Assembly: GCF_964213995.1 (NCBI RefSeq)
Contig: NW_027590137.1
Span: 372,001 to 436,000 of the forward strand
Length of the DNA: 64,000 nt
Origin: Mustelus asterias
Taxonomy: Eukaryota
Direction: 5' to 3'
Shown here: positions 37,401 to 63,269 of the stretch, piece after piece
Layout of the letters: every line of letters begins with the position of its first letter
Numbering within the stretch: position 1 is the stretch's first letter
The notes under the pieces: generated by a model
The model's input: only the letters and a program-made list of their open reading frames with translations
Told to the model about the DNA's origin: nothing
Database searches by the model: none
Translations under genes and position numbers: made by a program

Positions 37401-38308
37401 CGCAAACCCTTCAGAATCATTGTCAGCTCCCTGGTTTGCAGCTGCGGGGCTTCTCCCTCCCTCCCTCCCTCCCGGGAACAGGCCCAGGTTAACGGCCCCA
37501 TCCTGGCTCAGCCACTGGAGGATGGTTCACATCAGAGGATGGGGGAGGGGGACAATAAATAAGAGGTTACACTTTGACCTCAAATCAATGAGGACTCTGA
37601 TCTCTGGGAAGGAAGGAAACCCTGGGAGGTGGGCGGGGAGGATTCACAAACACCCGCTGGAGGCCCCAACACCCCCAATAAGACCCATTGGTTTTATTGT
37701 CAGTCTGCAGACAGGAGCTGGAGAACTGAACCCAGACAGAGGAGAGGGAGGGAGAAAACTGGGAGTGGAGGAAAGAAATGGTAGAGATGGGTTTGGATTT
37801 CAGCCCAGGGAAGAGGGAGAGTGTGTGGGACGGAGATTTACAGATTTGGGGGAACAAGAGAGGAAAAAATGTTCCAGGCGAACTAGAATTGTCTGTTCAG
37901 AGTTTGTATCGTGTTCTGACAGTGATGACTTTTCTAAACTGTTTTTACAGGATATTGGAAGTGAAAGATTGGCAGACAGAAAATTCAAACCGGACATCAC
38001 ATCTGACAAAGTCATTCAGTTCCTTCGGAGCTGAATATCATTGGTCTTTGAATATAGAAAGAGAAATATTTGTCTGTTCTGCCTGTGGGCAAAGAAATTA
38101 AACATCACTGTGACTGGAAAAGCATCGAGACAAACACACACCCGAGTGAGAGTGTTCCAGTGAACCGACTGTGGAAAGAGCTTTAACCAGTTACACAGCC
38201 TGAAAAAACATCACAGTTCACAGCAGGGTGAAACTACGTGTATGTTGTGTGTGTGGATGAGGCTTGAACTGATCATCCAACCTGGAGAAACACAAGGACA
38301 CCCGCACC

Positions 38309-39289
38309 ATGGAGAAACCGTGGAAATGTGTGGATTGTGGGAAGGGATTCGGTTTCCCATCACAACTGGAAGTTCATCGGCGCAGTCACACTGGGGAGAG
38401 ACCGTTCACCTGCTCCGTCTGTGGGAAGGGATTCACCCATTCATACAACCTTCTGACTCACCAACGGGTTCACACTGGGGAGAGGCCGTTCACCTGCCCT
38501 GTGTGTGGGAAGGGATTCACTCGCTCATCCCACATTGTGACACACCAACTTGTTCACACTGATGAGAGAATGTTTACATGTTCTGACTGTGAGAAGAGTT
38601 TTAAATGCAAAAAGGATCTGCTGACACACCAACGAATTCACACTGGGGAGAGACCGTTCACCTGCTCTGTGTGTGGGAAAGGATTCATTCAGTCATCCCA
38701 CTTGCAGACACATCAACTTGTTCACTCTGATAACAAACTTTTTAATTGTTCCCACTGTGCGAAGAGCTTTAAAAATAAAAAGGATCTGCTAACGCACCAA
38801 TATGCTCACACTGGGGAGAGGCCATTCACCTGCTGTGTGTGTGGGAAGGGATTCAGCCGTCCATCTGCCCTATTGAACCACCAGAGAATTCACACTGGGG
38901 AGAGGCCCTTCACCTGCTCAGACTGTGGGAAGGGATTCACTCGTTCATCCAACTTATTGAATCACCAGCGAGTTCACACTGGGGAGAGGCCGTTCACCTG
39001 CTCTGTGTGTGGGAAGGGATTCAGTCAGTCATCCAACCTGCTGACACACCAGAAAGTTCACAGTGCGGAGAGGCCACTTACCTGCTCTGTCTGTGGGAAG
39101 GGATTTTCTCATTTATCTTATCTTCTGAAACACCAGCGAGTTCACACTGGGGAGAGGCCGTTCACCTGTAATGTCTGTGGAAAGGGATTTATTCAGTCAT
39201 CCCACCTGCTAACACACCAGCGAGTTCACAAACGACTGCAAGGTTTGGATTCTACTCTTAATGATGCTGTTAATCATATCCAGGACTGA
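38309..39289 (+). CDS. C2H2 zinc-finger protein, 11 fingers
   Basis: Intact ORF from ACCATGG; paralog of 57808..58956. Confidence 0.9.
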
Positions 39290-39925
39290 ATCGTGTTCAC
39301 TCTGACAGTCTTCATCCGTTGAGGTTTAATATTCTGAATAAATATGAAATAGACCAGCTTTGTTTTTTAAAATTGTTGTAGATTTTTGTCTTTCCCACCT
39401 GACTGTTTAACATCACCAGGCTGGAGCTCAGAAAAGACAATCGGGGGTGGATCATATGGCAAACAGGACGCAGTCCTTCAGGGTCACAGAGGGACAAACA
39501 GCACTTTGCTCTTCCTCGTCTCTCTTCACGACAGCAAAGTACCCGTGTGGTTTAATCCTGAGATGTGCAAGAATCTCAGTCACTCCCTTCTATGTTTCAG
39601 CGCTCCTAGACCAGGAACAGAAGTTCCTTTACAACTGTGTTTAGAGTCAGGAAGAACAACAGTGAATGCTGGAAGCATGCTGCTAAATCAGAGATTGGTG
39701 CAAAACTGGGATCTGTTCCTGACTGAGAGTGAAATGGCAGGATTAGATTTCCAGACTGAAAATGCAGAAAAGTCTAAAATATTTTAATGTGTTTGTGTGT
39801 CAGTGCCAGTTTATTGAACAGAAACCAGCTCAAAATAAATTGGTTAAAGTCTGCATTAAAGTAGCAGCTGGAGAGTTCAAAGGAACCTGTTATCTGCTGG
39901 GACAATTAGACAACAATTTGATTCC

Positions 39926-39974
39926 CACTGAGACCCACAGTGAATGAGGCTCCCGCGGGCCTCATACAAAAAGT
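39926..39974 (+). pseudogene. 3' stub of a TCR V segment with an intact 23-RSS
   Basis: CA CTG AGA CC | CACAGTG (39936-39942), 23-nt spacer, ACAAAAAGT (39966-39974). The flank matches the V end GCG CTG AGC CC at 42391-42401. Confidence 0.8.
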
Positions 39975-40369
39975 GACGCAGACGTTTCAGGGTCAGAGAA
40001 AAAGAGTCGGATCTCAACGAAAATGCGCAGGAAATGAAGGCCACAATACAGCCCCAGCTGAATAATATTCCCCCACTGAGCTCAGCCATTGTCAGTGTTG
40101 TGAAATGTCACATTTGCCATCCTATTATTCCCGGATCAAATCCAACCATTCTCCGATCCCATCCGCACAAAATCTGCAGATTACCCCGGGTGAATAACTT
40201 CCTTAATCTGTACTTAGAAAAATTCTGGATTCGGTGCCTATCTGCCCGGCGACACATTTTAAAAGTGATCTATTATCAAATGCAGCCTCAGAATTGTTCC
40301 ATTTTCAAGTCCGTGGAGCAGAAATAATAACTGATTGAAATCAGAGCTTTTCTATTTGGGGAATAGAGG

Positions 40370-40820
40370 GGTACAGTGAAGATTTACTATGCTGATTCCT
40401 GGGATGGCAGCTCTGTCATATGAGGAGAGATTAAATCCGTTAGGATTATATTCACTGCGGTTTCGAATAGTGAGAGGGGGTCTCATAGAAACTTATAAAA
40501 TTCTAACAGGGTTCGACAGGGTAGATCCAGAAGACTGTTCCCAATGGTGGAATCCAGAACCATGGGTCATCTTTTGAAGATAAGGGAAAAACTGAGGTGA
40601 AGGGAAATTCCTTCATCCAGAGAGTGTTGAATGTATGGAATTCAATACCACCGAATGTAGTTGAGGCCAAAACGTTGTCTGATTTCAAGAAGAAATTTGA
40701 TATAGCTCTTGGGGCTAAAGGGGTCGAGGGGGAAGGAGGATCAGGATATTGAATTCCATGATCAGCTATGATTACGATGAATGGCGGAGAAGGCTCCTGC
40801 TTCTAGTTTCTATGTTATGA
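40370..40820 (+). mobile_element. CR1 3' fragment
   Basis: IPGMAALSYEERLNPLGLYSL...GLIETYKIL. Confidence 0.75.
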
Positions 40821-41800
40821 GTCCGTGAAATATTTCCTGGTGCAGAGTTGAGTGACTACTTATCCCCGGTATACTTACAGCACTAACTATTAATTATGTT
40901 GAGTCCTGGATGCTACTCATTAATCCCTGTACGTTAGGCTGCTGAATCATTGAATCCCGACAATGCAGGATGGAGCCTGTCCCGACAACAATCCCACCCA
41001 GGCCCTATCCCCGTAACCCACATATTTACCCTGCTATCCCCTGACACTTAGGGTAATTTTGCGTGGCCAATCCAGCAAACCTGCACAGTTTAGGAATGTG
41101 GAGGGAAACTGGAGCACCTGAGGAAACCCACGCAGACACGGTGAGAAAGTGCAAACTCCACAGAGACAGTGACCCGAGGCTGGAATCGAACCCGTGTCCC
41201 TGGGGCTGTGAGGCAACAATGCGAACCACTGCGCCACTGTGTCACCCATAAATGATTAAATTAGAAAAAAGGATCTGCCTTAAGAAAGATTGATGGACTG
41301 AGTTCTGAGGAAAGCGAGTTAACCAGTTAATGAGACAGAATAAGTGATGATGTGGGAGAGAGCAGAGAGAGAGCAAAGACTTTAGAAATAAGTTTACGGC
41401 CAGGGAAGGAATGTGATTGGAAAGTGCCAGCTATATTAAATCATTAACTAACAGTGATTGGTTCACTGGTTACGGGGCGGCATGATGCCACAATGGTCAG
41501 CGCTGCTGTCTCACAGTGTCAGGGACCCGGGTTCAATTCCGGCTTCGGATCACTTTCTGTCTGAGTTTGCATGTTCTCCCAGTGTCTACGTGGGTCCCCT
41601 TCGGGTTCTCCTGTTTCCTCCCACAGTCCAAAGATGTGCAGGTTAGGTTGATTGGCCATGCTAAATTGACCCGAGCGTCAGGGGATACGCAGGGTAAATA
41701 CATGGAGTTGCGGGAGTGGAGCCTGGGTGGTATTGTGACCGGTATAGACTCGATGGGGCGAATGGCCTCCTTCTGCACTGCAGGGATTTTATGATTCGCA

Positions 41801-41910
41801 GCTGACGTCAGCTCAGGGAGATGAGCCAATCGCAGCACTGAGAAACGCCTCCCTGTTTCTGAATACTTGAAGCTGCCTCTGATCTGAGTTCACTCTGTGA
41901 TATAAGACTA
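41801..41910 (+). promoter_or_regulatory. V-segment promoter (CRE, CCAAT, TATA)
   Basis: Palindromic GCTGACGTCAGC at 41801-41812, CCAAT at 41826, TATAAG at 41901 (63 nt before the ATG). Confidence 0.7.
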
Positions 41911-41963
41911 GAGGCAGCAACTTATTGTAAACATTGTCGCTGCTTACTGTCCAATCAGGAACC

Positions 41964-42401
41964 ATGTATCTCCTGTGTGCTTTACTGATAACAATGACCA
42001 CGCTGCCCGGTGAGTCTGAGCTCAGATCCTGAGTGTGTGTTTCATGGGTTATATTTGTTCACAGATTTCTCACACATTCTACATTTTGTTGCAGGAATCA
42101 ATGGCCAAGATTCAGTTTCCCAGGACCCGGCTGAATTAACGGTTCAGGAAGGATTGAACGTAATAGTGAATTGTAATTACACAACAACGGATGCTTTTCC
42201 AAATCTCTTCTGGTACATCCAGTATCCCGGGGAAGCTCCGAGATATTTACTGCAGAAATATAGCACGGGGGGCGGAGAAAAGTCTCCAGATTTCCCTGAC
42301 CGGTTTTCTGCTGATTTGGACAAGGACAAGAAAACAGTTCCTTTAAATATCACTGGGGTCCATGTCTCTGACTCTGCCGTGTATCACTGTGCGCTGAGCC
42401 C
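41964..42401 (+). CDS. TRAV: T-cell receptor alpha/delta-type variable gene segment (leader exon 41964-42009, intron 42010-42094, V exon 42095-42401)
   Basis: Leader MYLLCALLITMTTLP-G, then GTGAGT...TTTTGTTGCAG phase-1 intron. V exon INGQDSVSQ...VNCNY...LFWYIQYPGEAPRYLL...RFSADLD...VPLNI...SDSAVYHCALS has the canonical Cys/Trp/Cys. Alpha versus delta cannot be resolved by eye. Confidence 0.92.
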
Positions 42402-42440
42402 CACACTGCTACAGAGGCGCAGTGAGCCCGTACAAAAACC
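42402..42440 (+). other. V(D)J recombination signal sequence, 23-nt spacer
   Basis: CACACTG (42402-42408), 23 nt, then the consensus nonamer ACAAAAACC (42432-42440). Confidence 0.93.
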
Positions 42441-42636
42441 CGCAAAGGCACTCTCACCTCCTCTCACTGAATCAGATCTGTGACCTGGATTGTGAACTGT
42501 TAATACAAACAGAACAATTGTATAACGAAGAGTTAGTCCGAATGTTCTCATTCCATGGTGCTGAATGTGCCATTCTTGTTTAAACACTCTGCAATGCTGA
42601 GACTGGGAGAAGTGAACAACAGGGGGCAGCATTGCA

Positions 42637-43730
42637 GCTTCCATTTTACTATTATTCCTTCCAAAGTGGATAAGCTCACACTTACCAACGCTATACTCCA
42701 TCTGCCAGATCCTCGCCCACTCACTTAGCCTATCCAAATCTCTCTGCAGACTTACCGCATCCTCCACGCAATTCACTTTCCCACTCATCTTTGTGTCATC
42801 CGCAAACTTTGTTACCCAACACTCGGTCCCCTCCTCCAGATCGTCTATGCATATGGTAAATACTTGAGGCCCCAGCACCAATCCCTGTGGCACGCCACTA
42901 GTCACCAACTGCCAACCAGAAAAGCACCCATTTATTCCAACTCTCTGCTTCCTGTTAGATAGCCAATCCCCAATCCACGCTAACACTTTACCCCTAACTC
43001 CGTGCACCCTGATTTTCTGCAGCAACCTTTTGTGAGGCACCTTATCGAACGCCTTCTGGAAATCCAAAAACACCACATCCACTGGTTCCCCTCTGTCAAC
43101 CGCACTCGTTACATCAACATAAAAATCCAGTAAATTTGTCAAACACGACTTTCCCTTCATGAATCCATGCTGCGTCTGCTTGATCAAACCATTTTTTTCC
43201 AGGTGTCCTGCTATTTCTTCCTTAATGATGAATTCCAGCAATTTCCCAACTACGGACGTTAAGCTAACCGGCCTGTAGTTACCCGCCTTTTGTCTACCTC
43301 CTTTTTTAAACAGTGGCGTCACATTAGCTGTTTTCCAATCAGCCGGCACTTCCCCAGAGTCCAGCGTATTTTGATAAATTACAACCAACGCATCCTCTAT
43401 TACTTCTGCCATTTCTTTCAGTCCCCTGGGATGCATTCCATCCGGGCCCAGGGACTTGTCTACCTTTAGTCCCATTAGCCTCCCAAGCACTACCTCTTTA
43501 GTAATAGTAATCATTTTAAGGACCTCATCCCCTACAGTCCCATGACCGTCAATTTTCGGTAAGCTATTTGTGTCCTCTACCGTGAAGACTGATACAAAAA
43601 ACTTGTTTAAGGCCTCAGCCATTTCCTCGTTTCCCATTATTAAATCCCCCTTCTCATCTACTAAGGGTCCAACATTTACTTTAGCTACTCTTTTCCTTTT
43701 TATATATTTGTAAAAACTTTTACTATCTCT
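42637..43730 (-). mobile_element. CR1 RT fragment, truncated at both ends
   Basis: Middle of ORF 42384..43979: SKSFYKYIK...NYRPVSLTS...FADD...KCELIHFGRN. Confidence 0.88.
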
Positions 43731-43734
43731 CTGT

Positions 43735-43934
43735 CCCTCCCCCCCCCCTGGGCTTTGCCCCCCCCCCCCCCCCTGGGCTTTGCCCCCCCCCCCCCCGGCT
43801 TTGCCCCCCCCCCCGGGCTTTGCCCCCCCCCGGGCTTTGCCCCCCCCCCCCCGGGCTTTGCCCCCCCCGGGCTTTGCCCCCCCCGGGCATTGCCCCCCCC
43901 CCGAGCATTGCCCCCCCCCGAGCATTGCCCCCCC
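43735..43934. repeat. C-run minisatellite (C7-17 GGGCTTTG)n
   Basis: About 10 poly-C runs separated by GGGCTTTG, GGGCATTG or GAGCATTG. Confidence 0.85.
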
Positions 43935-44002
43935 AACCCACACATCCTGGGACACTAAGTGGCAATTGAGCATGGCCAATCAACCTAACCTGTACATCTT
44001 AT

Positions 44003-44159
44003 AAACAGTAAGAAGTCTCACAATACCAGGTTAAAGTCCAACAGGTTTATTTGATCGCACGAGCTTTCGGAGCACTGCTCCTTCATCAGGTGAATGGCCA
44101 CTCACCTGATGAACCTGGTGTTGTGTGCCCACCCCAGTCCAACGCCGACATCTCCACGT
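44003..44159. mobile_element. Penelope-like mini-insertion with a hammerhead motif on the minus strand
   Basis: CACGAGCTTTCGGAGCACTGCTCCTTCATCAGGTG; flanking CATCTTAT duplication (43995-44002, 44160-44167). Confidence 0.7.
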
Positions 44160-44898
44160 CATCTTATGGACTGCAGATTGATTCTCTGTAGAATCCTGTT
44201 CTTTCTCTCTATCAACATTCCTCTGCAAGTTTTATTTCCTTCAAGTACCCATCCAATTTCATTTTGAAATGATTGAATCTTCTGTTCCACCATCCTCATA
44301 GGCAGCGAGTTCTAGATCATGTGCTCTCCCTACCTAAATATAAATCTTCCTCAAATCCCTGCTCTACCACTACTCAAGTAATGTCCTGTATGTTACACTT
44401 TTATCCAGTATTATAGACATCTGTCTGGCAGCCTGCATGGAGATTTTCAGCTCCCTGTGTCCAGGACAGGAAGCCGTGAGCATGGATCTGTCAATCAGCC
44501 TCAATCAGCACCTTCAGGAGAATTGGGAGGGTGAATATTAGATACAGCAGAGTGAGAATTGAGGGAGAGTGTGTGGGATGGAGATTTACTGCGTTTGGGG
44601 AATGAGAGAGGAAAGAATGTTCCATAGAAACTAGAATTGTCTGTTCTGAATTTCTGTCCTGTACTGACACTGATGAATTTTGTAATCTCCTTTTGCAGGA
44701 TATCAGAAGGTGGGGATTTACAGACAGAAATCTCGAATCAAACGTCACATCAACATCTGACAGACATTTGATTGATTGGGACCCGAATATCATTGGCCTT
44801 TCAATCTTGAAGGAGAAATCTTTTAATGTTCTGTCTGCGTCAGAATTTTTTATAACATAAATGTGACTGGAAATACACCAAGACACAGACACACCTGA

Positions 44899-45006
<108 letters not shown>

Positions 45007-45056
45007 TGAGATTTAATTGACTGTTTAACCAGGAGGGTGACAAAGACACCTGCACC

Positions 45057-45380
45057 ATGGAGAAACCGTGGAAATGTGGGGACTGTGGGAAGGCATGTCA
45101 GTGCCCATCTGAGCTGGAAACCCATCGACGCAGCCACACCGGGGAGAGACCATTCACCTGCCTTGAGTGTAGGAAGTGTTTCACTCAGTCAAGCAACCTG
45201 CTGAGACACAAGCGAGTTCACACTGGGGAGAAACCGTACACTTGCTGTGTGTGTGGGAAGGGATTCACACATTCGTCCACCCTGCAGGATCACCAGCGGG
45301 TTCACACCGGGGAGAAGCCTGTCACCTGCTCCAAGTGCGGGAAGGGATTCAGTCGGTTATCAAACCTGCAGGAACACTAG
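45057..45380 (+). CDS. Short ZNF gene: 3 complete fingers, TAG in finger 4, a 5th finger following to 45479 (possible pseudogene)
   Basis: ACCATGG start; CAC TAG CGA GTT at 45375-45386; upstream mini-exon and intron 44531-44698. Confidence 0.75.
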   Translation: MEKPWKCGDCGKACQCPSELETHRRSHTGERPFTCLECRKCFTQSSNLLRHKRVHTGEKPYTCCVCGKGFTHSSTLQDHQRVHTGEKPVTCSKCGKGFSRLSNLQEH

Positions 45381-45476
<96 letters not shown>

Positions 45477-47285
45477 TGATGACAGGGGTTGGATTCTGTT
45501 TTATTGCTGCTGTTAATCACATCCAGGACTGAACCATGTTCATTCTGACAGTTGGTGAAGTGGGAGGGTCGGAGGGTTTCTTTCTGCTGGACTGGCCGGT
45601 CTCACGACTTTGCTTCTAGTTCGCTGATGCTCTTTGAGCCTGGGAGAGCACATTGCCACTGAAATGATCCACAAAAGCTGATGAAGGACATTTATTTTAT
45701 CCTGGATAGTAAATAGTGTTTTTCCTACCACTACAGGTAGATTTAAAATAAATACAGAAAGGACTGGAAAAACACAACACGTCTTGCAGCATCTGTGGAG
45801 AGAGAAACAGTGTTAATGTTTCACACTACTGGATTGGGAATCAATCTTGTAAACCTCCTCTGAACTGCTTCCAATGCATTTATATCCTTTGTTTAATAGG
45901 AGACAAAATTGTACCCTGTGTTCAAGGTGCAATCTCAGCAACGCCCTGCACAACTGAAGCATAACATCTTTACTTCTATGTTCAATTTCTCTCAGAATAA
46001 AGGATAACATTCCATTTATAAGAACTTTGATTTGTTTGAACTAAGATTTATGGGGGTTCTCTTGTTTACAATAACCTCCCCAATCGTAAATCACACCAGG
46101 TTCCAGTGACTTAATCATATGGCAAGAAAGAACACTTTAAATGGTGAATTCAGAAAGTTTATTAACCATTAAAAATGTAACGAGTCAGAAAGATAAAAAA
46201 GCAAAGTATCGATCAACAGCAAAAGGAGGAGAGCTTAACTTCAACTTCTCCATCCTTCTCAAACCAGGACATGAAGTGATGGCTCTGAAAACATGGATAA
46301 CTTGTAAAACTAACAGCTCTCAACGTCTCTCTGCGGGGCACAGTGTGAGGCACTGCTGCCTCACAGCAGAGGGTTCGAGTCCCGGCTTGGGTCACTGGCT
46401 GTGCGGAGTTCGCCCATTCTCCCCGTGTGTGTGCAGGTTTCCTCTGGGTGCTCCGGTTTCCTCCCACAGTCCGAAAGACGTGCTGGTTGGGTACATTGGC
46501 CATGCTAAATTCTTCCTCAGTTTACCCAAACAGGCACCAGAGTGTGGCGACTGGGGGATTATCAGAGTAACTTCATTGCAATGTTAATGTAAGTCTATGT
46601 GTGACACTAATAAACAAACTATAAAAAAAGTTAACTTTTAAAAACTTCTACCAGATTGGTTTCTCGAATCCCCTTTTTTATACTTTCAAAATGTAGAAAG
46701 CCATCCTCAGCTAATTGTTAGGAATTAGCCAATTGGTCTATAACTTGTCAATAATGAAATTGATTTGGTTTTTAGCTAATTGCACATATTGTCTTAATTT
46801 TAAGACATACCTTTCTCTCAAACGATATCTCTTAGCTTGGGGTAGCCCAAGTGTTGACCGATAATTGGTTCACATCAGTCATTCAATGTTGAGACATCTT
46901 GAACAGGAGCCGATTCATTCCCTCCAGTCAAGGTTAACAAGTCCTTTCATCTTTCTTTATTCTGTCAGCATGGGAAGGGAACATCTTATAATTCCCACAG
47001 CATTTTAACCATTCTTAAAGTGTTTATAATTCTAAAAGTTATAAACCTGTGTTCAAATTTATATTTCCAGCCTTTATAACATATGTATTAATGAATCATT
47101 TATTATTTAATTGTCTCACAATTAATGCTGTCTATTTAACTAATCTGGCTGCTTTCCAATTGTGGGAACTTCAGGCCACAAAAAAGGTAGTTAGAGTCGT
47201 AGAGGTTTACAGCATGGAAACAGGCCTTTCGGCCCAACTTGTCCATGCTGCCCAGTTTTTACCACTAAGCTAGTCCTAATTGCCC

Positions 47286-47436
47286 TGGAATATTACTCAT
47301 GATCTGTGCTTCCAAGCATTTTGAATGTGCATCTACAACAAGCAAAAACATGTGATTCATGAAAGGCCCCCCAAAGTCCACATGTAGTCTGGACCACGGC
47401 CTATCAGGCCACTCCCGAGGATGAAGTGGTAATGTA
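47286..47436 (-). mobile_element. Gypsy-type integrase fragment
   Basis: PLHPREWPDRPWSRLHVDFGGPFMNHMFLLVVDAHSK. Confidence 0.8.
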
Positions 47437-48148
47437 CCCAGTGTGTTGTGGGGAATGAACTCAGAAGAATCATTCAACACTCAAACCTGATTCAATCGAC
47501 AAACAGTTTATTGAGTTACGCCAGCGGGGAGAAGCCACAGGGGCTGACCATGTGCAACTCCACCCAATAAAGAATATCATCAATTCTTATCCAGTTACTC
47601 AGCCCATCCCGGCTGGACACAATCCAATCAGAATGGTGATCGATTACATACATTATAGGTTCAATAAAATTAGTATCTGGGCATTATGGGGCTTTGTGAT
47701 CATCTCATGGACAGATAGGTGCCCCCATCATGATGTTTTCCAGACCCCCTCGTCTACCATCCTTGGGGTTTTCTTTGTACATAGACTCAGTTTGAAAAGG
47801 GGTGGATTAAAAATTCTCAAATGGATGTCAGCACCCTTCCTTTGTTTCAATCTAATGACCACACGGTCTGGGAACATTTCTATTTAATAATCTCTCCTTT
47901 TAAACTCTGTTCTTCAGTATCCAATTCCAGAATTTTCCTTTTCATTGTGTTAATTGTGTCAGGATTAAATCTTTGGACCTGACAGGAAGTTTAACCCAAG
48001 ATCAATCCAACACAGGATTGGTCAGAATCGTTTCATATGTACCAAATTTTAAATAACTGAAGGGGGCGACCTTTATGCTTAATATCATGGATATTTTTAC
48101 GTGTGTATATCAAATTTATTTTAAAATATTGTCAACAGTTCACAGCAA

Positions 48149-48634
48149 TGCGATGACTCATGGAGAGGCTCCTTGCACCCCCTAATCACTTCAGACAGCC
48201 TTAATCACTTTAGACTCCAAGCAGGGAAACACAGACAATAGCTCAACTGATTAGATTATGCAAGAAGCTCAAATCACAAAGGGAGCTCTCCAGAAACAGA
48301 TCAGCCCAGGGGAAATGGGATCAGCTCCACCTATCTATAATGGCTGTTTTAATATCTCGCTATTGTGCCACTGCTTTGTGTTATGAGCTGGTACTGATCA
48401 TGTAACTTGTCGTAAATGTTGAACCTATTACCATATGTTTGGCATGAAGTTCAAAACCCTATAAACTGTAAAGCGCATAATGGCCAGGCAGAGCAGTTGA
48501 CGAGCAGCTGTCTCTCCCCAGGCCTGCGGTTTTGTTATTTTAAACAGAGAATAAAATTTGTGTTGCCTTTTTGTACTGTACTCATGTCTGCTTGTCTTTC
48601 ATGCTGGTAGGAAGTGAGAAAACTTCCCCTTACA
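48149..48634 (+). mobile_element. Possible solo LTR
   Basis: TG...CA ends, TATAAA near 48460, AATAAA near 48550; target-site duplication not convincing. Confidence 0.4.
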
Positions 48635-49489
48635 ATAACCATGACAAATTAAAACTCTCAATTTCATGAGTGAGTTTTATCTGGATTAAAATTCCCACAT
48701 GTTTAGTAAAATATCCTGGAATCCTGTCTCTGGACAGTAAATATGGCTCCAGGTTCATAACTTTTGAAAAAAAAAGCTTTATTCATTACACTTCCATTTT
48801 AAAAATCTGTTTGATTTAAATCACAGACAAAAAACCTCAAAGCTTAAAGCGTTCAACCCACAAATATCATCCACACACCAACAGAGAAACTTAGCATGTG
48901 CTTTACAATAATAACCAAAATTAATTACTTAAGCATTCTTCTGATTCTGTTTTTAAACTCCCAAAAATGCCTTTAATTAAAGACTCAAGGTAAGGTTAAT
49001 TCCCCAGAAAGATAAACCTTAACAAATGTAGCCCAAAACAATGATAAAACACATCTACAAACATCCACACAAAAACAAACAAAACACACAGATTCTCACA
49101 GCTTGTAAATTTCAAACAATGAATCCTCAGCATTCTCTCTCGCAGCTATAACTTCTTAAAGCGACAGAGCACTACAAGCTCACAACTCCTTGATTAAAAT
49201 AAGATGCAAGATCCTTCATTGTAACTTAACCCTTTTTAAGCCAACTTCCAAGGCCTGATTTTATCAGCAACATCTAATCTTTGTTAATTTAAAATCCCAA
49301 ACACGTTACCACCTGCAAACTCTTTGTTCTTTATCTGGTGTTGAGGTGACAACAAAATAAAATTCTCAGTTATTCCAAATTCCTCCAGGGTATGCTTAAA
49401 ATTTCCACATTTAACTGGCTCCAATAAATCCACAATTATAAACTAAAATAGACACGAGTTTCTGGGTGATTTAAAAACAAGTTAAAAAC

Positions 49490-52200
49490 AAGATGCCAGA
49501 GGAAAGATAGAACAGGAGGAAAGAAAGGAGGGGGAGTTGCACTTTTGATTCAGGAAAACATCACGGCAGTACTGAGAGGGGATATATCCGAGGGTTCGCC
49601 TACTGAGTCAAAAGGGTTGAACTGAGAAAGAAGGGGGAAATCACTTTGATATGGTTGTACTATAGGCCCCCAAATAGTCGGTGGGAAATTGAGGAGCAAA
49701 TATGTAAGGAGATTACAGATAGTTCCAAGAAAAATTGGGTGGTAATAGTCGGGGATTTTAACTTTCCCAACATTGACTGGGACAGCCATAGTATTAGAGG
49801 CTTGGATGGAGAGAAATTTGTTGAGTGTATTCAGGAGGAATTTCTCATTCAGTATGTGGATGGCCCGACTAGAGAGGGGCAAAAGTTCACCTCCTCTTGG
49901 GAAATAAGGAAGGGCAGGTGATAGAAGTGTGAGTGAGGGATCACTTTGGGACCAGTGACCATAATTCCATTAGTTTTAAGATACCTATGGAAAATGATTG
50001 GTCAGGTCCAAAAGTTAAAATTCTAAATTAGGGAAAGGCCAATGTTGATGGTATCAGGCAGGAACTTTCGACAGTTAACTGGGGGAGTCTGTGGGAAGGC
50101 AAAGGGACGTCTGGTAAGTGGGAGGCTTTCAAAAGTGTTTTAACCAGGGTTCAGGGTAAGCACATTGCTCTTAGAGTGATGGGCAAGGCTGGTAGAAGTC
50201 GGGAACCCTGGATGACTCGAGATATTGAAGCCCTCGTCAAGAAGAAGGAGGCACATGACATGCATCGGCAGCTGGGATCAAGTGGATCCCTTGAAGAGTT
50301 TCGAGGGTGTAGGAGTAGAATTAAGAGAGAAGTCAGGAGGGCAAAAAGGGGACACGAGATTGTTTTGGCAGATAAGGCAAAGGAGAATCCAAAGAGGTTC
50401 TATAAATACATAAAGTGCCAAAGAGTAACTAGGTAGAGAGTAGGGCCTCTTAAGGATCAACAAGGTCATCTATGTGCGGATCCACAAGAGATGGGTGAGA
50501 TCATAAATGAATATTTTTCATCATTATTTATTGTTGAGAAAAGCATGGATGTTAGGGAACTTGGGGAAATAAAGTGATGTCTTGAGAAGTGTACTTATAA
50601 CAGAGAAGGAGGTGCTGGAAGTCACAAAGCGCATCAAGGTAGATAAATCCCCGGGACCTGATGAAGTGTATCCCAGAACACTGTGGGAGGCTAGGGAGGA
50701 AATTGCGGGTCTCCTAGCAGAGATATTTGAATCATCGATAGTCACGGGTGAGGTGCCTAAAGATTGGAGGGTGGCAAATGTGGAGCCTTTGTTTAAAAAG
50801 GGCTGCAGGGAAAAGCCTGGGAACTAAAGGGCGGTGTGATTCACATCTGTAAGTTGTCAGAAGGTATTTGAGAGACAGGATCTACAGGCATTTGGAGACA
50901 CAAGGACTGATTAGGGACGGTCAGCATGGCTTTGTGAGTGGAAAATCATGTCTCACAAATTTGATTGAGTTTTTTGAAGGGGTAACCAAGAAGGTAGATC
51001 AGGGCAGTACAGGTGATGCTGTCTACGTGGACTTTAGCAAGGCCTTTGACAAGGTACCGCAAGGTAGGTTGTTGCTTAAGGTTAAATCTAATGAAATCCA
51101 GGGTGAGTTAGCCAAATGGATACAAAATTGGCTTGATGACAGAAGACAGAGGGTGGTTGTAGAAGGTTGTTTTTCAAACTGGAGCCTGAGACCAGCGGTG
51201 TGCCTCAAGGATCGGTGCTGGGTCCACTGTTATTTGTCATTTATATTAATGATTTGGATGAGAATGTAGGAGGCATGGGTAGTAAGTTTTCAGATGACAC
51301 CAAAGTTGGTGGCATTGTGGACAGTGGAGAAGGCTATCTAGGATTGTAGCGCGATCTTGATCAATTGGGCCAGTGGGCTGACGAATGGCAGATGGAGTTT
51401 AATTTAGATAAATGCAAGGTAATCCATTTTGGGCGATCGAACCAGGACAGGACTTACTCAGTTAATGGTAGGGTGTTGGGGAGAGTTACAGAACAGAAAT
51501 CTAGGGGTACAGGTACATAGCTCCTTGAAAATGGAGTTGCAGGTGGACAGAGTGGTGAAGAAGGCATTCTGCATGTTGGTCAGAACATTGAATACAGGAG
51601 TTGGAATGTCTTGTTGAAGTTTTACAAGACATTGGTAAGGCCACACTTGGAATACTGTGTACAGTTCTGGTCACCCTATGATAGAAAGGATATTATTAAA
51701 CTAGAAAGACTGCAGAAAAGATTTACTGGGATGCTACCGGGACTTGATGATTTGAGTTATAAAGAGAGGCTGGATAGACTGGGACTTTTTTCCCTGGAAT
51801 GTAGGAGGCTTAGGGGTGAACTTATAGAGGTCTATAAAATAATGAGGGGCATAGATCAGCTAGATAGTCAATATCTTTTCCCAAAGGTAGGGGAGTCTAA
51901 AACTAGAGGGCATAGGTTTAAGGTGAGAGGGGAGAGATACAGAAGGGTCCAGAGGGGCACTTGTTTCACACAGAGGGTGGTGAGTGTCTGGAAAAAGGTG
52001 CCAGAGGTAGTAGTAGAGGCAGGTACAATTTTGTCTTTTAAAAAGCGTTTAGACAGTTACATGGGTAAGATGGGTGTCGAGGGATATGGGCCAAACGTGG
52101 ACAATTGGGATGAGCACAGGGGTTAAAAAAGGGGCGGCATGGACAAGTTGGGCTGAAGGGCCCGTTTCCAAGCTGGAAACCTCTATGACTCCATGACTAA
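49490..52200 (+). mobile_element. Long decayed CR1 ORF2 (endonuclease plus RT)
   Basis: YYRPPN, VGDFNFPNIDW, SDHN, KSPGPD and [10 protein letters not shown] motifs, with many stops and frameshifts. Confidence 0.9.
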
Positions 52201-53291
52201 ATCAACTGTCTGCTGAAAGGGTTAACTTTTCTACAGAACCGAAAGGGGTGGGGAGTGAGAAGAAACTTGGCACACAGTTACATCACTTTACATAATTTTT
52301 AAAAACTTCTCTAACAACAAAACAAAGTTGATTTTAAACTTTATCTATGAATTCTTTTGTTCTCTTCCTCAAACTAATTATTTTAATTTGTTCAGTTTTT
52401 GTTAGGGATGGGTAACTTCTGTTCTTTATAAACTGGTTCACTCATTTTGTTAATTCTACATGGGCTCGGAGAATCAGAACCCAGACTTTATCATCCTGAT
52501 CCTTTTTCTCCTTCTGCCACCACTCCCTCTGTTTTGAAGGAGGGTCATGGGGATTCCAATCAGAACTAATCATTTCATCAGAAGAGTAAAATACTGCAGA
52601 TACCGGAATCTGAAACAAAAACACAAAATGCTGGAAAATCTCAGTAGGTCTGACAGCACCTGTGAAGAATGGAGCCAAGGTTTCGATAATGGATGACCCT
52701 TCATAACAGCTCTCATGAAGTATCATTCAGACTCAAAATGTTGGCTCTGTTCTCTAATCATTTTATCGATACATTTCTTGTTCTTAGTTTGAGGTTTAAA
52801 GTGAGAGGGGAGAGATACAAAAGGGTCCAGAGGGGCAGTTTTTCACTCAGGTCGTGGTGAGTGTCTGGAACGAGTTGCCAGAGGCAGTGGTAGAGGTGGG
52901 TACAATACTGTCTTTTCAAAAGCATTTAGACAGTTACACGGGTAAGATGGGTATAGAGGGATATGGGCAAAATACGGGCAATTGGGACTAGCTTAGTGGT
53001 AAAAACTGAGCGGAATGGACAAGTTGGGCTGAAGGGCCTGTTTCCATGTTGTAAACCTCTATAACTTCCTAACACCCTGTCACTCTGTGATCCGTGTGAA
53101 ATCTAAAAACCAGGTATTCGCAACAAGACTCAAAGAGCATCAGCCCACTGGAGGCAAAGTCATGAGACCGGCCAGTCCAGCAGAAAGAAACCCTCCGACC
53201 CTCCCCATTGACCAACTGTGAGAATGAACAAAATGCAGTCCTGGATGTAATTGAGAGCAGAAACAATAACAGCAGAATCCAACCTCTGGAA

Positions 53292-54470
53292 TCACTCGTG
53301 AACTCGCTGGTGTCTCAGCAGGTGGGATGAAACTCTGAATCCCTTCCCACACTGAGAGCAGGTGAATGGCCTCTCCCCAGTGTGAACTCGCTGGTGTGTC
53401 TGCAAGTTGGATGACTGAGTGAATCCCTTCCCACACTGAGAACAGTTGAATGGTCTCTCCCCAGTGTGAACTCGCTGGTGTCTCTGCAGGTGGGATGACT
53501 GAGTGAATCCCTTCCCACACTGAGAGCAGGTGAACGGCCTCTCCCCTGTGTGAACTCGCTGGTGTGTCCGCAGATCAGATGAGTTAGTGAATCCCTTCCC
53601 ACACTGAGAGCAGATGAATGGTTTCTCCCCAGTGTGAACTCGCTGGTGTATTCGCAGGCTGGATAACAGAATGAATCCCTTCCCACACTGAGAGCAGGTG
53701 AACGGCCTCTCCCTTGTGTGACGTAGCTGGTGTCTCTGCAGGTCGGCTGACTGAGTGAATCTCTTCCCACACTGAGAGCAGGTGAACGGTCTCTCCCCAG
53801 TGTGAACTCGTTCGTGTGTCCGCAGGATGGATGAGTTCGTGAATCCCTTCCCACACTGAGAACAGTTGAATGGCCTCTCCCCAGTGTGAACTCGTTGGTG
53901 TCTCTGCAGGAGGGATAACAGAATGAATCCCTTCCCACACTGAGAGCAGGTGAACGGCCTCTCTCCTGTGTGAACTTGCTGGTGTTTCTGCAAGCTGGAT
54001 AACTGAATGAATCCCTTCCCACACTGAGAGCAGGTGAATGGTTTCTCCCCAGTGTGAACTCGCTGGTGTATCCGCAGGCTGGATAACAGAATGAATCCTT
54101 TCCCACACTGAGAGCAGGTGAATGGCCTCTCCCCAGTGTGAACTCGTTCATGTGTCCGCAGGGTGGATAATTGAGTGAATCCCTTCCCACACTGAGAGCA
54201 GGTGAACGGCCTCTCCCCAGTGTGAACTCGCTGGTGTCTCTGCAGGTCGGATAACTGACTGAATCCCTTCTCACATTGAGAGCAGGAAAATGGCCTCTCT
54301 CCAGTGTGAACTCGCTGGTGTCTCTGCAGGAGGGATAATCGAGTGAATCCCTTCCCACATTGAGAGCAGGTGAATGGTCTCTCCCCAGTGTGGCTGCGTC
54401 GATGAGCTTCCAGCTTAGATGGGGCTCTGTATCCCTTCCCACAGTCCCCACATTTCCATGGTTTCTCCAT
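53292..54470 (-). CDS. C2H2 zinc-finger protein, 14 fingers
   Basis: ACCATGG start at 54470; intact array; same subfamily as the genes starting at 11859 and 33013. Confidence 0.9.
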
Positions 54471-55059
54471 GGTGCAGGTGTCCTTACCTCTCTCTTGACT
54501 GGACAATTAGTTGAAACTTCGCCCACACTCAGAACAAGATTACAGTCTCTCCCCGCTGTGAATGGTGTGATATTTATTCAGACTGTGTAACTGGTTAAAG
54601 CTCTTTAGTCAGTGCATTGGAACACTCTCACTCAAGTGTGGCAGTGTGTTGATGCTTTTTCACTCACACTGACATTTCAAATCTTTTCAAATCGACAGAC
54701 TGGACAATCATTTCTCCTTCTGGATTCAAAGTCCGATGATATTGAGGTCCCAAGGAATATGACTCTGTCACGTCTAGACATGACGTTTGAGATTTCGGCC
54801 TGTGATTCCTCTTTCAATATCCTGTAAAACGAGTTTACAAAAGTCATCAGTGTCAGTACAGCATAGAAATTCAGAACAGACAATTTCTATGGAACATTCT
54901 TGCCTCTCTCATTCCCCAAAAGCTGTAAATCTCCATCCCACACACTGTCTCCCCATTCTCAGCAGGTCTGGCAGCATCTGTATGGAGAGAAAAGAACTGA
55001 TGTTTCAGAGCTTTGACAAAGGGTCATCGAGACAAGAAACATCAGCTCTTGATGTAGGA

Positions 55060-55378
55060 AGAGAGATTCCTATTCGCTGATTCAGGCAGGCTCCATTGTG
55101 ACGTCACAATGCGGAAGTTGTCCAATGAGCTTCAGATTGAAACTTCCTCTTCTGGACAACATCTGGGAGGAAATCAAAGTTTCCCCCTTTCCATTTCTTT
55201 TCTCATTCTGGGGAAATTGGGGACTTGCAGCAACTGAAGGGAGTGAAGTGAATTCGGTCTGTATATTCCACACATTTTTACTCCAGTAATGTAGACATTT
55301 ATTTGTCTGGCAGCCTGCATGGAAATTTTCAGCTCTCTGCATCCAGGGCAAGAAGCAGTGAGCATGGATCTGTCAATC
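55060..55378 (+). promoter_or_regulatory. 5' end of a ZNF gene (CRE/ETS promoter and first exons) cut off by a Penelope-like insertion
   Basis: 18-bp palindrome CATTGTGACGTCACAATG (55094-55111) followed by CGGAAGT; 55270-55378 matches 44395-44495. Confidence 0.6.
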
Positions 55379-55750
55379 ACACATGAGGACGGCCTCAACC
55401 GGGATCTTGGGTTCATGTCACACTATCTGTAACTCACACTGTCTGTAACCCCCACAAATTGCCTGGGCTTGCAAAATCTCACTAACTGTCCTGGCTGGAG
55501 ACAATACACATCTCTTTAACCTGTGCTTCACCCTCTCTCCACTCACATTGTCTGTACCTTTAAGACTTGATTACCTGTAAAGACTCACATTCCAACCATT
55601 ATTTTGTAAATTGAGTTTGTGTCTCTGTGCCCTGTTTGTGAATAGAACTCCCACTCACCTGATGAAGAGCAGCGCTCCAAAATCTTGTGGCTTATGCCAG
55701 CAAATTAACCTGTTGGATTTTAACCTGGTGTTGTGAGATTACTTACTGTC
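55378..55750 (+). mobile_element. Penelope-like element 3' end
   Basis: THEDGLNRDLGFMSHYL* followed by the same pseudo-LTR as at 16290-16637. Confidence 0.8.
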
Positions 55751-56439: not shown

Positions 56440-56900
56440 CAGCCTCAATGGCGGCAGTCAGCCCGGGTCTAACACTACAAGCTGCCGCTCCATTTGGTAC
56501 AAAGGGGGGGAACCGGGAAGTTCATTTCCGGGGTTTGGGGTTGAACAACATGTTTACAAAGCCTCTCCACCCACCCGCCACATTTATCATTCCCCGCGCG
56601 CCGCCCTCTACCTCGTATTGATCTCGCTACCGAGTTAAAACCGTCCATCCGTCGTCATTACCCGCACTGCGCATGCTACAGGCCCCGCCTCTCATTCACT
56701 CCGATTGGTTGGAGGACCAGCCGCTCCCGCTCGGTCCTCCAGTCCGGCCCCCTCTTCCTATTGGTCCGGAGCTGCCGTCAATCAGTCCCCGGGCATTGTG
56801 ATGTGGAGCATGCGCAGTGTCATTGCTGGCCTTGGCGCTTGTTTGTCCCGGAGAAGCGGAGTCAGCGTTAGGCGGTGGCTGGGAGGATTTGGAAACACTT
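56440..56900 (+). promoter_or_regulatory. ZNF promoter module (copy C)
   Basis: Same motifs as copies A and B, plus CCGGGAAGT. Confidence 0.7.
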
Positions 56901-57807
56901 TGTGGATCCGCAAACCCTTCAGAGTCATTGTCAGCTCCCTGGTTTGCAGCTGCGGGGCTTCTCCCTCCCTCCCTCCCGGGAACAGGCCCAGGTTAACGGC
57001 CCCATCCTGGCTCAGCCACTGGAGGATGGTTCACATCAGAGGATGGGGGAGGGGGACAATAAATAAGAGGTTACACTTTGGCCTCAAATCAATGAGGACT
57101 CTGATCTCTGGGAAGGAAGGAAACCCTGGGAGGTGGGCGGGGAGGATTCACAAACACCCGCTGGAGGCCCCAACACCCCCAATAAGACCCATTGGTTTTA
57201 TTGTCAGTCTGCAGACAGGAGCTGGAGAACTGAACCCAGACAGAGGAGAGGGAGGGAGAAAACTGGGAGTGGAGGAAAGAAATGGTGAGATGGGTTTGGA
57301 TTTCAGCGCAGGGAGGAGGGAGAGTGTGTGGGACGGAGATTTACAGATTTGGGGGAACAAGAAAGGAAAAAATGTTCCAGAAAGACTAGAATTGTTCAGA
57401 GTTTCTATCCTGTTCTGACAGTGATGACTTTTCTAAACTGTTTTTACAGGATATTCAAAGTGAAGGAATGGCAGACAGAAAACTCAAACCGAACATCACA
57501 TCTGACAAAGTCATTCAGTTCCTTCGGAGCTGAATATGATCGGTCTTTGAATATGGAAGGAGCAATATTTGTCTGTTCTGCCTGTGGGCAAAGAAATTAA
57601 ACATCAGTGTGACCAGAAAAGCAGCAGGACAAACACACACCCGAGTGAGAGTGTTCCAGTGAACCGACTGTGGAAAGAGCTTTAACCAGTTACACAGCCT
57701 GAAAAAAAATCACAGTTCACAGCAGGGTGAAACTACGTGTATGTTGTGTGTGTGGATGAGGCTTGAACTGATCATCCAACCTGGAGAAACACAAGGGCAC
57801 CAGCACC

Positions 57808-58956
57808 ATGGAGAAACAGTGGAAATGTGTGGATTGTGGGAAAGGAATCAGTTTCCCATCACAACTGGAAGTTCATCAGCGCAGTCACACTGGGGAGAGA
57901 CCGTTCACCTGCTCTGTTTGTGGGAAGGGATTCACCCATTCATACAACCTTCTGACTCACCAACGGGTTCACACTGGGGAGAGGCCGTTCACCTGCCCTG
58001 TGTGTGGGAAGGGATTCACTCGCTCATCCCACATTGTGACACACCAACTTGTTCACACTGATGAGAGACTGTCTCCATGTTCTGACTGTGGGAAGAGTTT
58101 TAAATGCAAAAAAGATCTGCTGACGCACCAACGTATTCACACTGGGGAGAGACCGTTCACCTGCTGTGTGTGTGGGAAAGGATTCATTCAGTCATCCCAC
58201 TTGCAGACACATCAACTTGTTCACTCTGATAACAAACTTTTTAATTGTTCCCACTGTGAGAAGAGCTTTAAAAATAAAAAAGATCTGCTGACGCACCAAT
58301 ATACTCACACTGGGGAGAGGCCATTCACCTGCTGTGTGTGTGGGAAGGGATTCAGCCATCCATCTGCCCTATTGAACCACCAGAGAATTCACACTAGGGA
58401 GAGGCCCTTCACCTGCTCAGACTGTGGGAAGGGATTCATTAATTCATCCAACCTTCTGATACACCAGCAACTCCACACAGGGGATCGACCGTTCACCTGC
58501 TCTGAATGTGGGAAGGGATTCACCCGTTCATACAACCTTCTGACACAGCAGCAGGTTCACAGTGAGGAGAGGCCATTCACTTGCTCCGTATGTGGGAAGG
58601 GATTCACTCGTTCATCCAACCTATTGAATCACCAGCGAGTTCACACTGGGGAGAGGCCGTTCACTTGCTCCATGTGTGGGAAGGGATTCAGTCAGTCATC
58701 CAACCTGCTGACACATCAGAGAGTTCACAGTGGGGAGAGGCCATTTACCTGCTCTGTCTGTGGGAAGGGATTTTCTCATTTCTCTTATCTTCTGAAACAC
58801 CAGCGAGTTCACACTGGGGAGAGGCCGTTCACCTGTAATGTCTGTGGAAAGGGATTTGTTCAGTCATCCCACCTGCTAACACACCGGCGAGTTCACAAAC
58901 GACTGCAAGGTTTGGATTCTACACTTATCGATGCTGTTAATCATATCCAGGTCTGA
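57808..58956 (+). CDS. C2H2 zinc-finger protein, 13 fingers (finger 9 His-to-Gln)
   Basis: Intact ORF from ACCATGG. Confidence 0.9.
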
Positions 58957-59859
58957 ATCATCTTCACTCTGACTTTTTTCTTCTGTTGAGGTTTGATATT
59001 CTGAATAAATGTGAAATAGACATTTGATTGAATCATTGTTGTAGATTTTTGTCTTTTTCATTTGAGTGTTTAACGTCACCAGGCTGGAGCTCAGAAAGGG
59101 CAATCTGAGGGAGGATCACACAGTAGGAACAGAACTTCATTCTTGACCCAGTCCTTCAGGGTCACGCTGAGAGGGACAAACAGCACTTTGGTCTTTTTCG
59201 TCACTTTTCACTGACAGCAAAGTCCCCGTGTGGGTGAATCCTGAGGTGTGTAAGAAATGTGTCCCAGTCGTTCTTTTCCATGGTTCCGAGCTCCGAGACA
59301 CGGAACAGAAGCTCTTTTACAACTGTGTTTAGAGTTAGGAAGAACAATGGTGAATGCTGGAAACGTGCTGTCAAAGATTGGTGTAAAACTGGGATCTATT
59401 CCTGACTGAGAGTGAAACGGCAGGTTTAGGTTTCCAGACTAAAAATGCAAAAAAGTCTAAAACATTTTAATGTGTGTGTGTGTCAGTCCTGGTTTATTGA
59501 ACAGAAACTGGCTTAAAATAAATTGGTTGAAGTCTGCATCAAAGTAGCAGCTGGAGACGTTCAAAGGAGCCTGTTAACTGCTGGGACAATTAGACAACAA
59601 TTTGATTCCCAGATAGAGAAGGAGCTGCAGTGTGGATCCAAAAATTCTCAGTTTTGTTGTGTGCTTCCCATACACTATCCTTTTAAATAAACCTCACTCC
59701 TATCAGCCTTTAACCATTAGAAACAGAACAGAGAGAAGCTGAGCAGCAACAGAGCCCTCACTGACCATTTAAGAATGAGTGATGTGTTCAGCTGAAGTTT
59801 CCTGTTGGTAGTTTTTTGGGTGATCTTATTTTGATCATTCTCAGTGACCCCTGGGTGTG

Positions 59860-63240: not shown

Positions 63241-63269
63241 CTCTGTCACTGTGATTATTGGACAAGCAG

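What the first reader, a model, noticed from the sequence alone, without database searches (positions are those of the whole stretch)
39915..39974. Second, decapitated V segment: a 23-RSS right at a ZNF duplication breakpoint
Seen: perfect heptamer CACAGTG, 23 nt, ACAAAAAGT, preceded by CA CTG AGA CC, which is in phase with the C-A-L-x-P end of a V exon. Homology to the paralogous ZNF 3' flank (...CAATTTGATTCCCA, about 59611) stops at about 39927, so the duplicated ZNF unit abuts a V of which only ~10 nt remain. Two co-oriented RSSs 2466 bp apart mean 39926-42636 is a piece of a real V array. Known: cartilaginous fish have germline-joined antigen-receptor genes attributed to germline RAG activity. 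Inference: ZNF birth-and-death and V arrays exchange DNA here, and RAG nicking near an RSS may have seeded the break. The junction is not flush with the heptamer, so it is not a canonical RAG joint.
Basis: partly seen in the sequence, partly recalled or inferred. Interest (0 to 1): 0.82.

Follow-up and report, generated by a model that had tools for sequence, protein, structure and literature searches.

The report
Beheaded T-cell-receptor V gene relic
A leftover recombination signal from a lost T-cell-receptor V gene sits directly against the tail of a zinc-finger gene copy in a shark genome, which is the kind of truncated V relic common in antigen-receptor loci and shows no mark of the RAG recombinase.

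Summary
A perfect heptamer CACAGTG, a 23-nt spacer and the nonamer ACAAAAAGT lie at 39936-39974. They are preceded by CTGAGACC, which matches 7 of 8 letters, in the same phase, of the coding end of the intact TCR-alpha-like V 2466 bp downstream. Homology to the paralogous zinc-finger (ZNF) unit stops exactly at 39927/59611.

Two contigs from another sample of the same species match the RSS side, 5 differences in 295 letters and about 85% alike. Both stop matching at 39926 and run on with unlike letters. So the join fuses two unrelated families and shares only the 2 nt CA.

My reading is a 5'-truncated V relic that kept its 23-RSS, joined to the ZNF 3' flank by ordinary deletion or duplication. 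Nothing points to RAG. The coding stub is still attached to the heptamer, and the ZNF side has no cryptic RSS.

Three things stay unproven:
- that the paralogs carry an intact V upstream;
- that the join is present in independent reads;
- any genome-wide enrichment of breakpoints near RSSs.

Truncated V pseudogenes with an intact RSS are well known: 50 of 123 human VH segments are truncation pseudogenes. Unchecked scan notes place V segments inside ZNF clusters elsewhere in this genome. None describes an orphan RSS.

The parts
37056..39927 (+). ZNF unit A: truncated promoter module, C2H2 finger ORF (38309-39289, 326 aa) and 3' flank
   Evidence: blastn against the window: 37056-39230 matches 56567-58729 at 93.8%, and homology runs to 39927/59611. 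Pfam zf-C2H2 E=4.4e-68. The left edge is truncated relative to two paralogous promoter modules: 56449-56700 matches 15623-15374, while unit A begins only at 37056, matching 15506.
39926..39927 (+). CA shared by both sides of the join (2-nt microhomology)
   Evidence: The ZNF-B alignment runs through 39927. Both RSS-side contigs start matching at 39926 (records 3 and 4).
39928..39935 (+). Stub of V coding end, CTGAGACC (Leu-Arg-Pro phase)
   Evidence: 7 of 8 letters identical, in the same phase, to the end of the intact V (CTGAGCCC at 42394-42401).
39936..39974 (+). 23-RSS: heptamer CACAGTG, 23-nt spacer, nonamer ACAAAAAGT
   Evidence: Only 8 of 23 spacer letters match the spacer of the neighbouring V (counted on alignment A1), so it comes from a different V family.
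39975..40369 (+). 3' flank of the lost V; no other copy in the window
   Evidence: No blastn hit within the window. Contigs from X2 (records 3, 4) and X5 (record 16) lie on it at 85-98% likeness. At 40031, X6 and X7 have 2 contigs each.
40369..41797 (.). Repeat-derived spacer: a fragment matching the stretch just after a LINE reverse-transcriptase ORF, and an inverted pair of a very high-copy element (40970-41245 / 41486-41797)
   Evidence: Window self-blast hits. 'Opposite strands' joints and many loose ends at 41019-41797.
41964..42401 (+). Intact TCR-alpha-like V: leader exon 41964-42009, intron, V exon 42095-42401
   Evidence: Read from the sequence. Pfam V-set E=1.4e-17. The best single-domain PDB matches are TCR alpha chains, E about 2e-18.
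42402..42440 (+). 23-RSS of the intact V: CACACTG / 23 / ACAAAAACC
56567..59611 (+). ZNF unit B, the paralogue of unit A; its 3' flank continues into sequence unrelated to the RSS side
   Evidence: Record 15 of X5 has the same length (294 letters) and the same 6 gap letters as unit B over 39630-39927, then runs on for 395 unlike letters.

Best explanation
This is a relic of a TCR-alpha/delta-type V gene segment. Only its last 8-10 coding nucleotides, its intact 23-RSS and about 400 bp of its own 3' flank survive. The rest of the V (leader, intron and nearly all of the V exon) was lost in an ordinary germline rearrangement. That event was either a deletion or the edge of a copied segment, repaired by end joining or template switching with 2 nt (CA) of overlap. 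It set the relic directly against the 3' flank of a C2H2 zinc-finger gene copy. Shown: the motif, the sharp homology edges on both sides, and the existence of other versions of the RSS-side sequence that diverge at the same base. Inferred: that those versions carry a V exon upstream, and the repair mechanism. RAG is not needed and left no mark. The RSS looks competent by sequence, so it could still be cut in thymocytes, but that would be a side effect.
For: - The perfect heptamer, 23-nt spacer and nonamer with the A-run kept occur once in the window. The strict scan expects 0.025 per window.
- CTGAGACC before the heptamer matches CTGAGCCC of the intact V 2466 bp downstream, in the same orientation and phase.
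- That V is V-set and closest to TCR alpha chains among single-domain PDB hits.
- ZNF homology ends at exactly 39927/59611, with 24 identical nt before and none after. The 3' flank is 550 of 629 = 87.4% identical up to that point.
- X2 records 3 and 4 (about 85% alike, and 5 differences in 295) both begin to match at 39926 and have 17 and 12 further unlike letters. X5 record 15 matches 39630-39927 and then runs on unlike for 395 letters.
- Unit A is also truncated at its left edge relative to two paralogous promoter modules, so this neighbourhood has had several breaks.
- Precedent: 50 of 123 human VH segments are truncation pseudogenes, and the table rows I saw include 5'-truncated ones with CACAGTG/23/nonamer intact (passages and table rows read).
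Against: - No V exon was seen upstream of any paralogue.
- Only 8-10 nt of supposed coding sequence remain, too few for a homology test.
- The RSS spacer is unlike the neighbouring V's (8 of 23 letters).
- None of the 32 listed pieces (of 398,704 laid) bridges 39927/39928, so the join rests on the assembly and on X1 holding 0.96 of the sampled words. X1 may be the assembly's own source.
- At 40031 every laid contig of X2, X6 and X7 reads A where the window has G, so the window's own copy was not seen in those runs at that site.
Confidence: 0.75

Rival explanations
1. RAG made or seeded the break. Germline RAG activity nicked at or near this RSS, and repair joined the ZNF flank to it.
For: The RSS looks competent by sequence. 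Germline RAG activity in sharks is in print: Lee et al. 2000, PMC2193156 (search listing and start of abstract only).
Against: RAG cleaves exactly at the border between coding end and heptamer and separates the coding end from the RSS (established knowledge, recalled). Here 8-10 nt of coding sequence are still attached to the heptamer. There is no partner RSS, no heptamer-to-heptamer signal joint and no target duplication. The scan found no RSS-like site at 59611 or 37056. A 2-nt overlap is typical of ordinary end joining.
Confidence: 0.04
2. It is not a V relic. The RSS-like motif is a chance match, or the end of a repeated or mobile element that happens to start at 39926.
For: 5 of 200 shuffled windows give a strict RSS by chance, so a genome of several Gb should hold many. 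The RSS-side sequence exists in several versions, all beginning to match at 39926, as a mobile element's terminus would. No V exon was shown upstream of those versions.
Against: The motif sits 2466 bp upstream of a real V and is co-oriented with it. Its 8 preceding nt copy that V's coding end in phase, with odds of about 4e-4 for at least 7 of 8 by my arithmetic. If it were an insertion into the ZNF flank, homology with unit B should resume after it, and blastn of 59500-64000 finds nothing in 39928-56000. No inverted partner terminus was found.
Confidence: 0.12
3. Assembly artefact: the ZNF flank and the V flank were joined wrongly by the assembler.
For: No listed contig from X2, X5, X6 or X7 bridges the join. 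X2 record 4 is nearly identical to the RSS side but has different letters upstream.
Against: There are no N and no repeat at the join, only 2 shared nt, whereas misjoins usually sit in long repeats. X1 holds 0.96 of the 99 sampled words of 39500-40500. Only 32 of 398,704 laid pieces were listed, so a missing bridge proves nothing.
Confidence: 0.06

Closest known systems
5'-truncated V pseudogenes that keep their RSS (for example human IGHV truncation pseudogenes; Matsuda et al. 1998, PMC2212390)
   Same: The V coding sequence is lost from the 5' side and the heptamer/23/nonamer is left intact. They lie among functional V segments in regions rich in duplications and non-immune gene fragments (50 of 123 VH are truncation pseudogenes; rows such as 1-14P list a 5' truncation with CACAGTG/23).
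   Different: This truncation is extreme, with only 8-10 nt of coding sequence left. The abutting sequence is the 3' flank of an apparently intact zinc-finger gene. The locus is a shark TCR-alpha/delta-type V in a ZNF cluster.
Isolated RSS elements used as deleting elements (human deltaRec with psiJalpha; the kappa deleting element)
   Same: An RSS without a usable coding segment inside an antigen-receptor locus (names and roles recalled; papers on them seen only as listings and abstract starts).
   Different: Those elements have defined partners and a shown role in locus deletion. Here no partner, no use and no conservation have been shown.
Cryptic RSS and RAG by-products (signal joints, hybrid joints, episome reinsertion; PMC1820826, seen as listing and abstract start)
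   Same: An RSS in an unexpected neighbourhood.
   Different: RAG products have the foreign DNA flush with the heptamer, give or take a few nt of processing. Here a V-like coding stub in phase lies between them.
Germline-joined antigen-receptor genes of cartilaginous fish (Lee et al. 2000, PMC2193156)
   Same: Same group of animals and a germline change to a V segment.
   Different: Germline joining removes the RSSs and fuses V to (D)J. Here the RSS is kept and the V is lost, with no J nearby.

Membership tests
Recombination signal sequence (23-RSS) | Heptamer CACAGTG with the first three letters CAC | tested here: met
   Perfect CACAGTG at 39936-39942.
Recombination signal sequence (23-RSS) | Spacer of 23 nt, give or take 1 | tested here: met
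   23 nt, 39943-39965.
Recombination signal sequence (23-RSS) | A-rich nonamer close to ACAAAAACC | tested here: met
   ACAAAAAGT matches 7 of 9 letters and keeps the A-run.
Recombination signal sequence (23-RSS) | Flanks a V, D or J coding segment | tested here: not met
   Only 8-10 V-like nt remain. Upstream is the ZNF 3' flank, and tblastn finds no V remnant anywhere else in the window.
Recombination signal sequence (23-RSS) | Bound and cut by RAG1/RAG2 | not testable with these tools
   This needs a recombination substrate assay or rearranged thymocyte DNA.
5'-truncated V pseudogene (V relic) | Residual sequence homologous to a V coding end, in phase with the RSS | tested here: inconclusive
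   CTGAGACC versus CTGAGCCC of the neighbouring V, 7 of 8 in the same phase. This is too short for a homology statistic.
5'-truncated V pseudogene (V relic) | Lies among V segments and is co-oriented with them | tested here: met
   An intact V with a 23-RSS on the same strand lies 2466 bp downstream. It is the only V in the window.
5'-truncated V pseudogene (V relic) | Paralogues of its 3' flank are preceded by intact V exons | tested here: inconclusive
   Two other versions exist, and both stop matching at 39926 with 12 and 17 further letters.
RAG-made joint (signal, hybrid or transposition) | Foreign DNA flush with the heptamer, a partner RSS, or a short target duplication | tested here: not met
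   A stub of 8-10 nt lies between the join and the heptamer. The only other good RSS is that of the intact V.
Germline-joined antigen-receptor gene | V fused to (D)J with the RSSs lost | tested here: not met
   The RSS is intact, the V is absent, and the scan found no good 12-RSS; its single 11-13-spacer hit (2736) is weak.
Isolated deleting element (deltaRec/KDE type) | An RSS without a coding segment that rearranges to a fixed partner | not testable with these tools
   It is isolated in structure. Its use in lymphocytes is unknown.

The most novel reading that the evidence does not exclude
The orphan 23-RSS is still used by RAG in thymocytes. Lying co-oriented with functional V segments, it would join the ZNF 3' flank to J segments. 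It could then act as a decoy or as a locus-deleting element of the deltaRec/KDE type. If V cassettes are scattered through ZNF clusters across this genome, as unchecked scan notes suggest, such relic RSSs could expose ZNF genes to RAG-driven somatic or germline rearrangement.
Probability: 0.05. Interest if true: 0.6.

Novelty: new member of a known kind. Interest (0 to 1): 0.2.

Why it matters
By itself it matters little. Truncated V relics with a surviving RSS are normal debris of birth-and-death evolution in antigen-receptor loci. Its use is as a clean, base-resolved breakpoint that shows how V cassettes and zinc-finger genes are shuffled together in this shark genome. It also serves as a reminder that sequence-competent RSSs can sit beside ordinary genes. 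The wider pattern of TCR-type V segments embedded in ZNF clusters on many pieces of the genome (unchecked notes) is the more interesting lead. It deserves a whole-genome analysis.

Tried and rejected
- **Remainder of the lost V.** A tblastn search with the V exon at E up to 100 found only the intact V. There is nothing upstream of the ZNF unit or elsewhere.
- **Tandem duplication.** I tested whether a tandem duplication of about 19.7 kb, with the intact upstream V near 20.2 kb, could explain the join. It cannot: 39928-40369 has no copy in the window.
- **Insertion into the ZNF flank.** No homology with unit B's flank resumes anywhere.
- **Shared 3' flank between relic and intact V.** None beyond the coding end, heptamer and nonamer.
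- **CTCF-like motif.** Other notes report one at a fixed distance behind the nonamer. I found none within about 170 bp of either RSS, and none in the window at up to 1 mismatch to the recalled consensus.
- **Relatives of the V exon.** The search of the 5.8-billion protein set gave one hit, P0001 (74% identity). It reads through an RSS like the intact V's, not like the orphan's.
- **Read-through peptide.** phmmer with the 47-aa peptide of the orphan RSS and flank gave two long repetitive proteins (E = 4.7e-07 and 1.7e-05). I take them as spurious.
- **Pfam.** No hit on that peptide. The tRNA-Val-like gene at 36109-36183 is confirmed.
- **Metagenome scan.** A scan for a 24-mer of the RSS found 0.
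- **Copy number.** Depths were not used for copy number, as the tool advises.
- **Literature.** Searches for sharks, TCR alpha and zinc fingers found nothing relevant. PMC12227049 has 0 occurrences of 'zinc finger', ZNF or pseudogene. Supplements were not consulted.

Full report
**What is there.** The window reads ...GACAACAATTTGATTCCCA CTGAGACC CACAGTG (23 nt) ACAAAAAGT... The heptamer is at 39936-39942 and the nonamer at 39966-39974. The exact pattern occurs once in the window and in none of 100 shuffles. My own scan of both strands allowed one heptamer mismatch, spacers of 11-13 or 22-24 nt, and up to two nonamer mismatches. It found four sites. Two are weak (2736 and 6965). The two good ones are this site and the RSS of a real V at 42402-42440 (CACACTG/23/ACAAAAACC).

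**How unlikely is the motif.** Under the strict definition (perfect heptamer, 23-nt spacer, nonamer with at most 2 mismatches), shuffled windows give a mean of 0.025, and 5 of 200 had at least one. The motif alone is therefore not proof in a genome of several Gb. The context carries the case.

**The neighbouring V.** The gene at 41964-42401 is intact. It has a leader exon (41964-42009), a gt...ag intron and a V exon (42095-42401) that ends TGT GCG CTG AGC CC directly before the heptamer.
- The exon matches Pfam V-set at E = 1.4e-17.
- Among single-domain solved structures its best matches are TCR alpha chains, E about 2e-18.
- The eight letters before the orphan heptamer, CTGAGACC, match CTGAGCCC of this V in 7 of 8 places and in the same phase.
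- The spacers agree in only 8 of 23 places, and the flanks behind the nonamers do not align. The lost V therefore belonged to a different family from its neighbour.
- tblastn with the V exon at E up to 100 finds no other V-like coding sequence in the 64 kb. 'Array' here means one V plus this relic.

**The ZNF side.** A self-comparison shows that 37056-39927 is paralogous to 56567-59611. Identity is 93.8% over the promoter and fingers and 550 of 629 = 87.4% over the 3' flank. The last 24 nt before 39927/59611 are identical, and nothing aligns after. The stretch 39928-40369 has no copy in the window. The flank of unit B (59612-64000) has no match in 39928-56000. That argues against a simple insertion into an otherwise continuous ZNF flank. 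Unit A is also cut short at its left edge. Unit B and a third promoter module (15374-15623, minus strand) share a further 118 bp that unit A lacks. Left of 37056 lies unrelated GC-rich sequence behind a tRNA-Val-like gene (36109-36183). Pfam gave no support for that.

**Evidence from outside the window.** Runs of the same species and of related sharks hold parts of 39500-40500. I laid the contigs of four runs on 36700-42650 at 80% likeness. X2 and X5 are the same species from two studies. X6 and X7 are two related organisms. Repeats dominated the output, and only 32 of 398,704 laid pieces were listed. Three of the listed pieces bear on the join:
- X2 record 4 (307 letters) matches 39926-40220 with 5 differences and has 12 further letters before 39926 that do not fit.
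- X2 record 3 (440 letters, about 85% alike) matches 39926-40348 and has 17 further letters beyond 39926 that do not fit.
- X5 record 15 (689 letters) matches 39630-39927 and then runs on for 395 unlike letters. It has the same length (294) and the same 6 gap letters as unit B over that span.

Each side of the join thus belongs to its own family, and members of both families part from the window at the same base. The two families overlap by the 2 nt CA (39926-39927). That is the signature of a fusion of two unrelated sequences in the window's copy.

**Results that cut against my reading.**
- None of the listed pieces bridges 39927/39928.
- At 40031 all laid contigs of X2 (3), X6 (2) and X7 (2) read A where the window has G.
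- The join itself therefore rests on the assembly and on X1 holding 0.96 of the sampled words. X1 may be the assembly's own source.
- I could not see the letters upstream of the paralogues.
A metagenome scan gave 0. The scan's own sequence index returned nothing.

**Mechanism.** The best reading is a V gene beheaded by an ordinary germline rearrangement. Either a deletion ran from the ZNF 3' flank into the V exon, or the edge of a copied segment fell 8-10 nt before the RSS. Repair left a 2-nt overlap, as in end joining or replication template switching. I cannot tell deletion from duplication edge with one window.

The RAG idea is not supported. RAG nicks exactly at the border between coding end and heptamer and separates the two (established knowledge, recalled). 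Here that border is intact. There is no partner RSS, no signal joint and no target duplication. No RSS-like site lies at 59611 or 37056. Germline joining in sharks (Lee et al. 2000, PMC2193156; listing and abstract start only) removes RSSs and fuses V to J, which is the opposite of what is seen here.

**Comparison with what is known.** Truncated V pseudogenes are common. In the human VH locus 50 of 123 segments are truncation pseudogenes. The table rows I read include 5'-truncated ones that keep CACAGTG/23/nonamer, and groups of them spread by later duplication (Matsuda et al. 1998, PMC2212390; passages and table rows read). Isolated RSSs with a function exist, such as deltaRec and the kappa deleting element (recalled; listings). 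Nothing here shows such a use.

Other unchecked first-reader notes on this genome describe lone V segments and V islands inside C2H2 ZNF clusters on several pieces. One such note places an island of seven V segments 340 kb beyond this window's end. No note describes an orphan RSS at a ZNF edge. In such a mixed landscape rich in duplications, a V relic against a ZNF unit is expected debris.

**Verdict.** A RAG role is not supported. This is a new member of a known kind, and its interest is low.

Noticed in passing
window 36109-36183 and 36200-37056: ARAGORN calls a tRNA-Val(GAC)-like gene at 36109-36183. It is followed by GC-rich sequence with short tandem CTGCC-type repeats and an ORF start at 36824 that ends abruptly at the truncated ZNF promoter at 37056. 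Pfam found nothing in the 78-aa piece.
   Followed up: partly
window 42384-43979 (minus strand): A LINE reverse-transcriptase ORF (RVT_1, E=3.2e-30). Its homology to other copies in the window stops near 42640, about 200 bp behind the nonamer of the intact V. The V piece 39928-42640 is therefore bounded by breaks on both sides.
   Followed up: partly
window 40970-41245 and 41486-41797: An inverted pair of a very high-copy short element lies between the relic and the intact V. It gave by far the most laid contigs, and many 'opposite strands' joints, in all four runs.
   Followed up: no
window 62357-63251: A minisatellite with an 87-bp unit, about 10 copies at 94-98% identity, open in several frames.
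   Followed up: no
window 10952-12601 versus 32273-34592, and 53057-54526: Near-identical ZNF flanks (96-98%) around different finger arrays, in inverted orientation. This points to recent duplication or conversion among ZNF genes.
   Followed up: no
window 37264-37663: In run X5, a small contig set of 33 million letters, one contig on the ZNF unit's 5' region has a much higher word depth (74) than the other listed X5 pieces (3.6-9.3). The run's kind is not on record.
   Followed up: no
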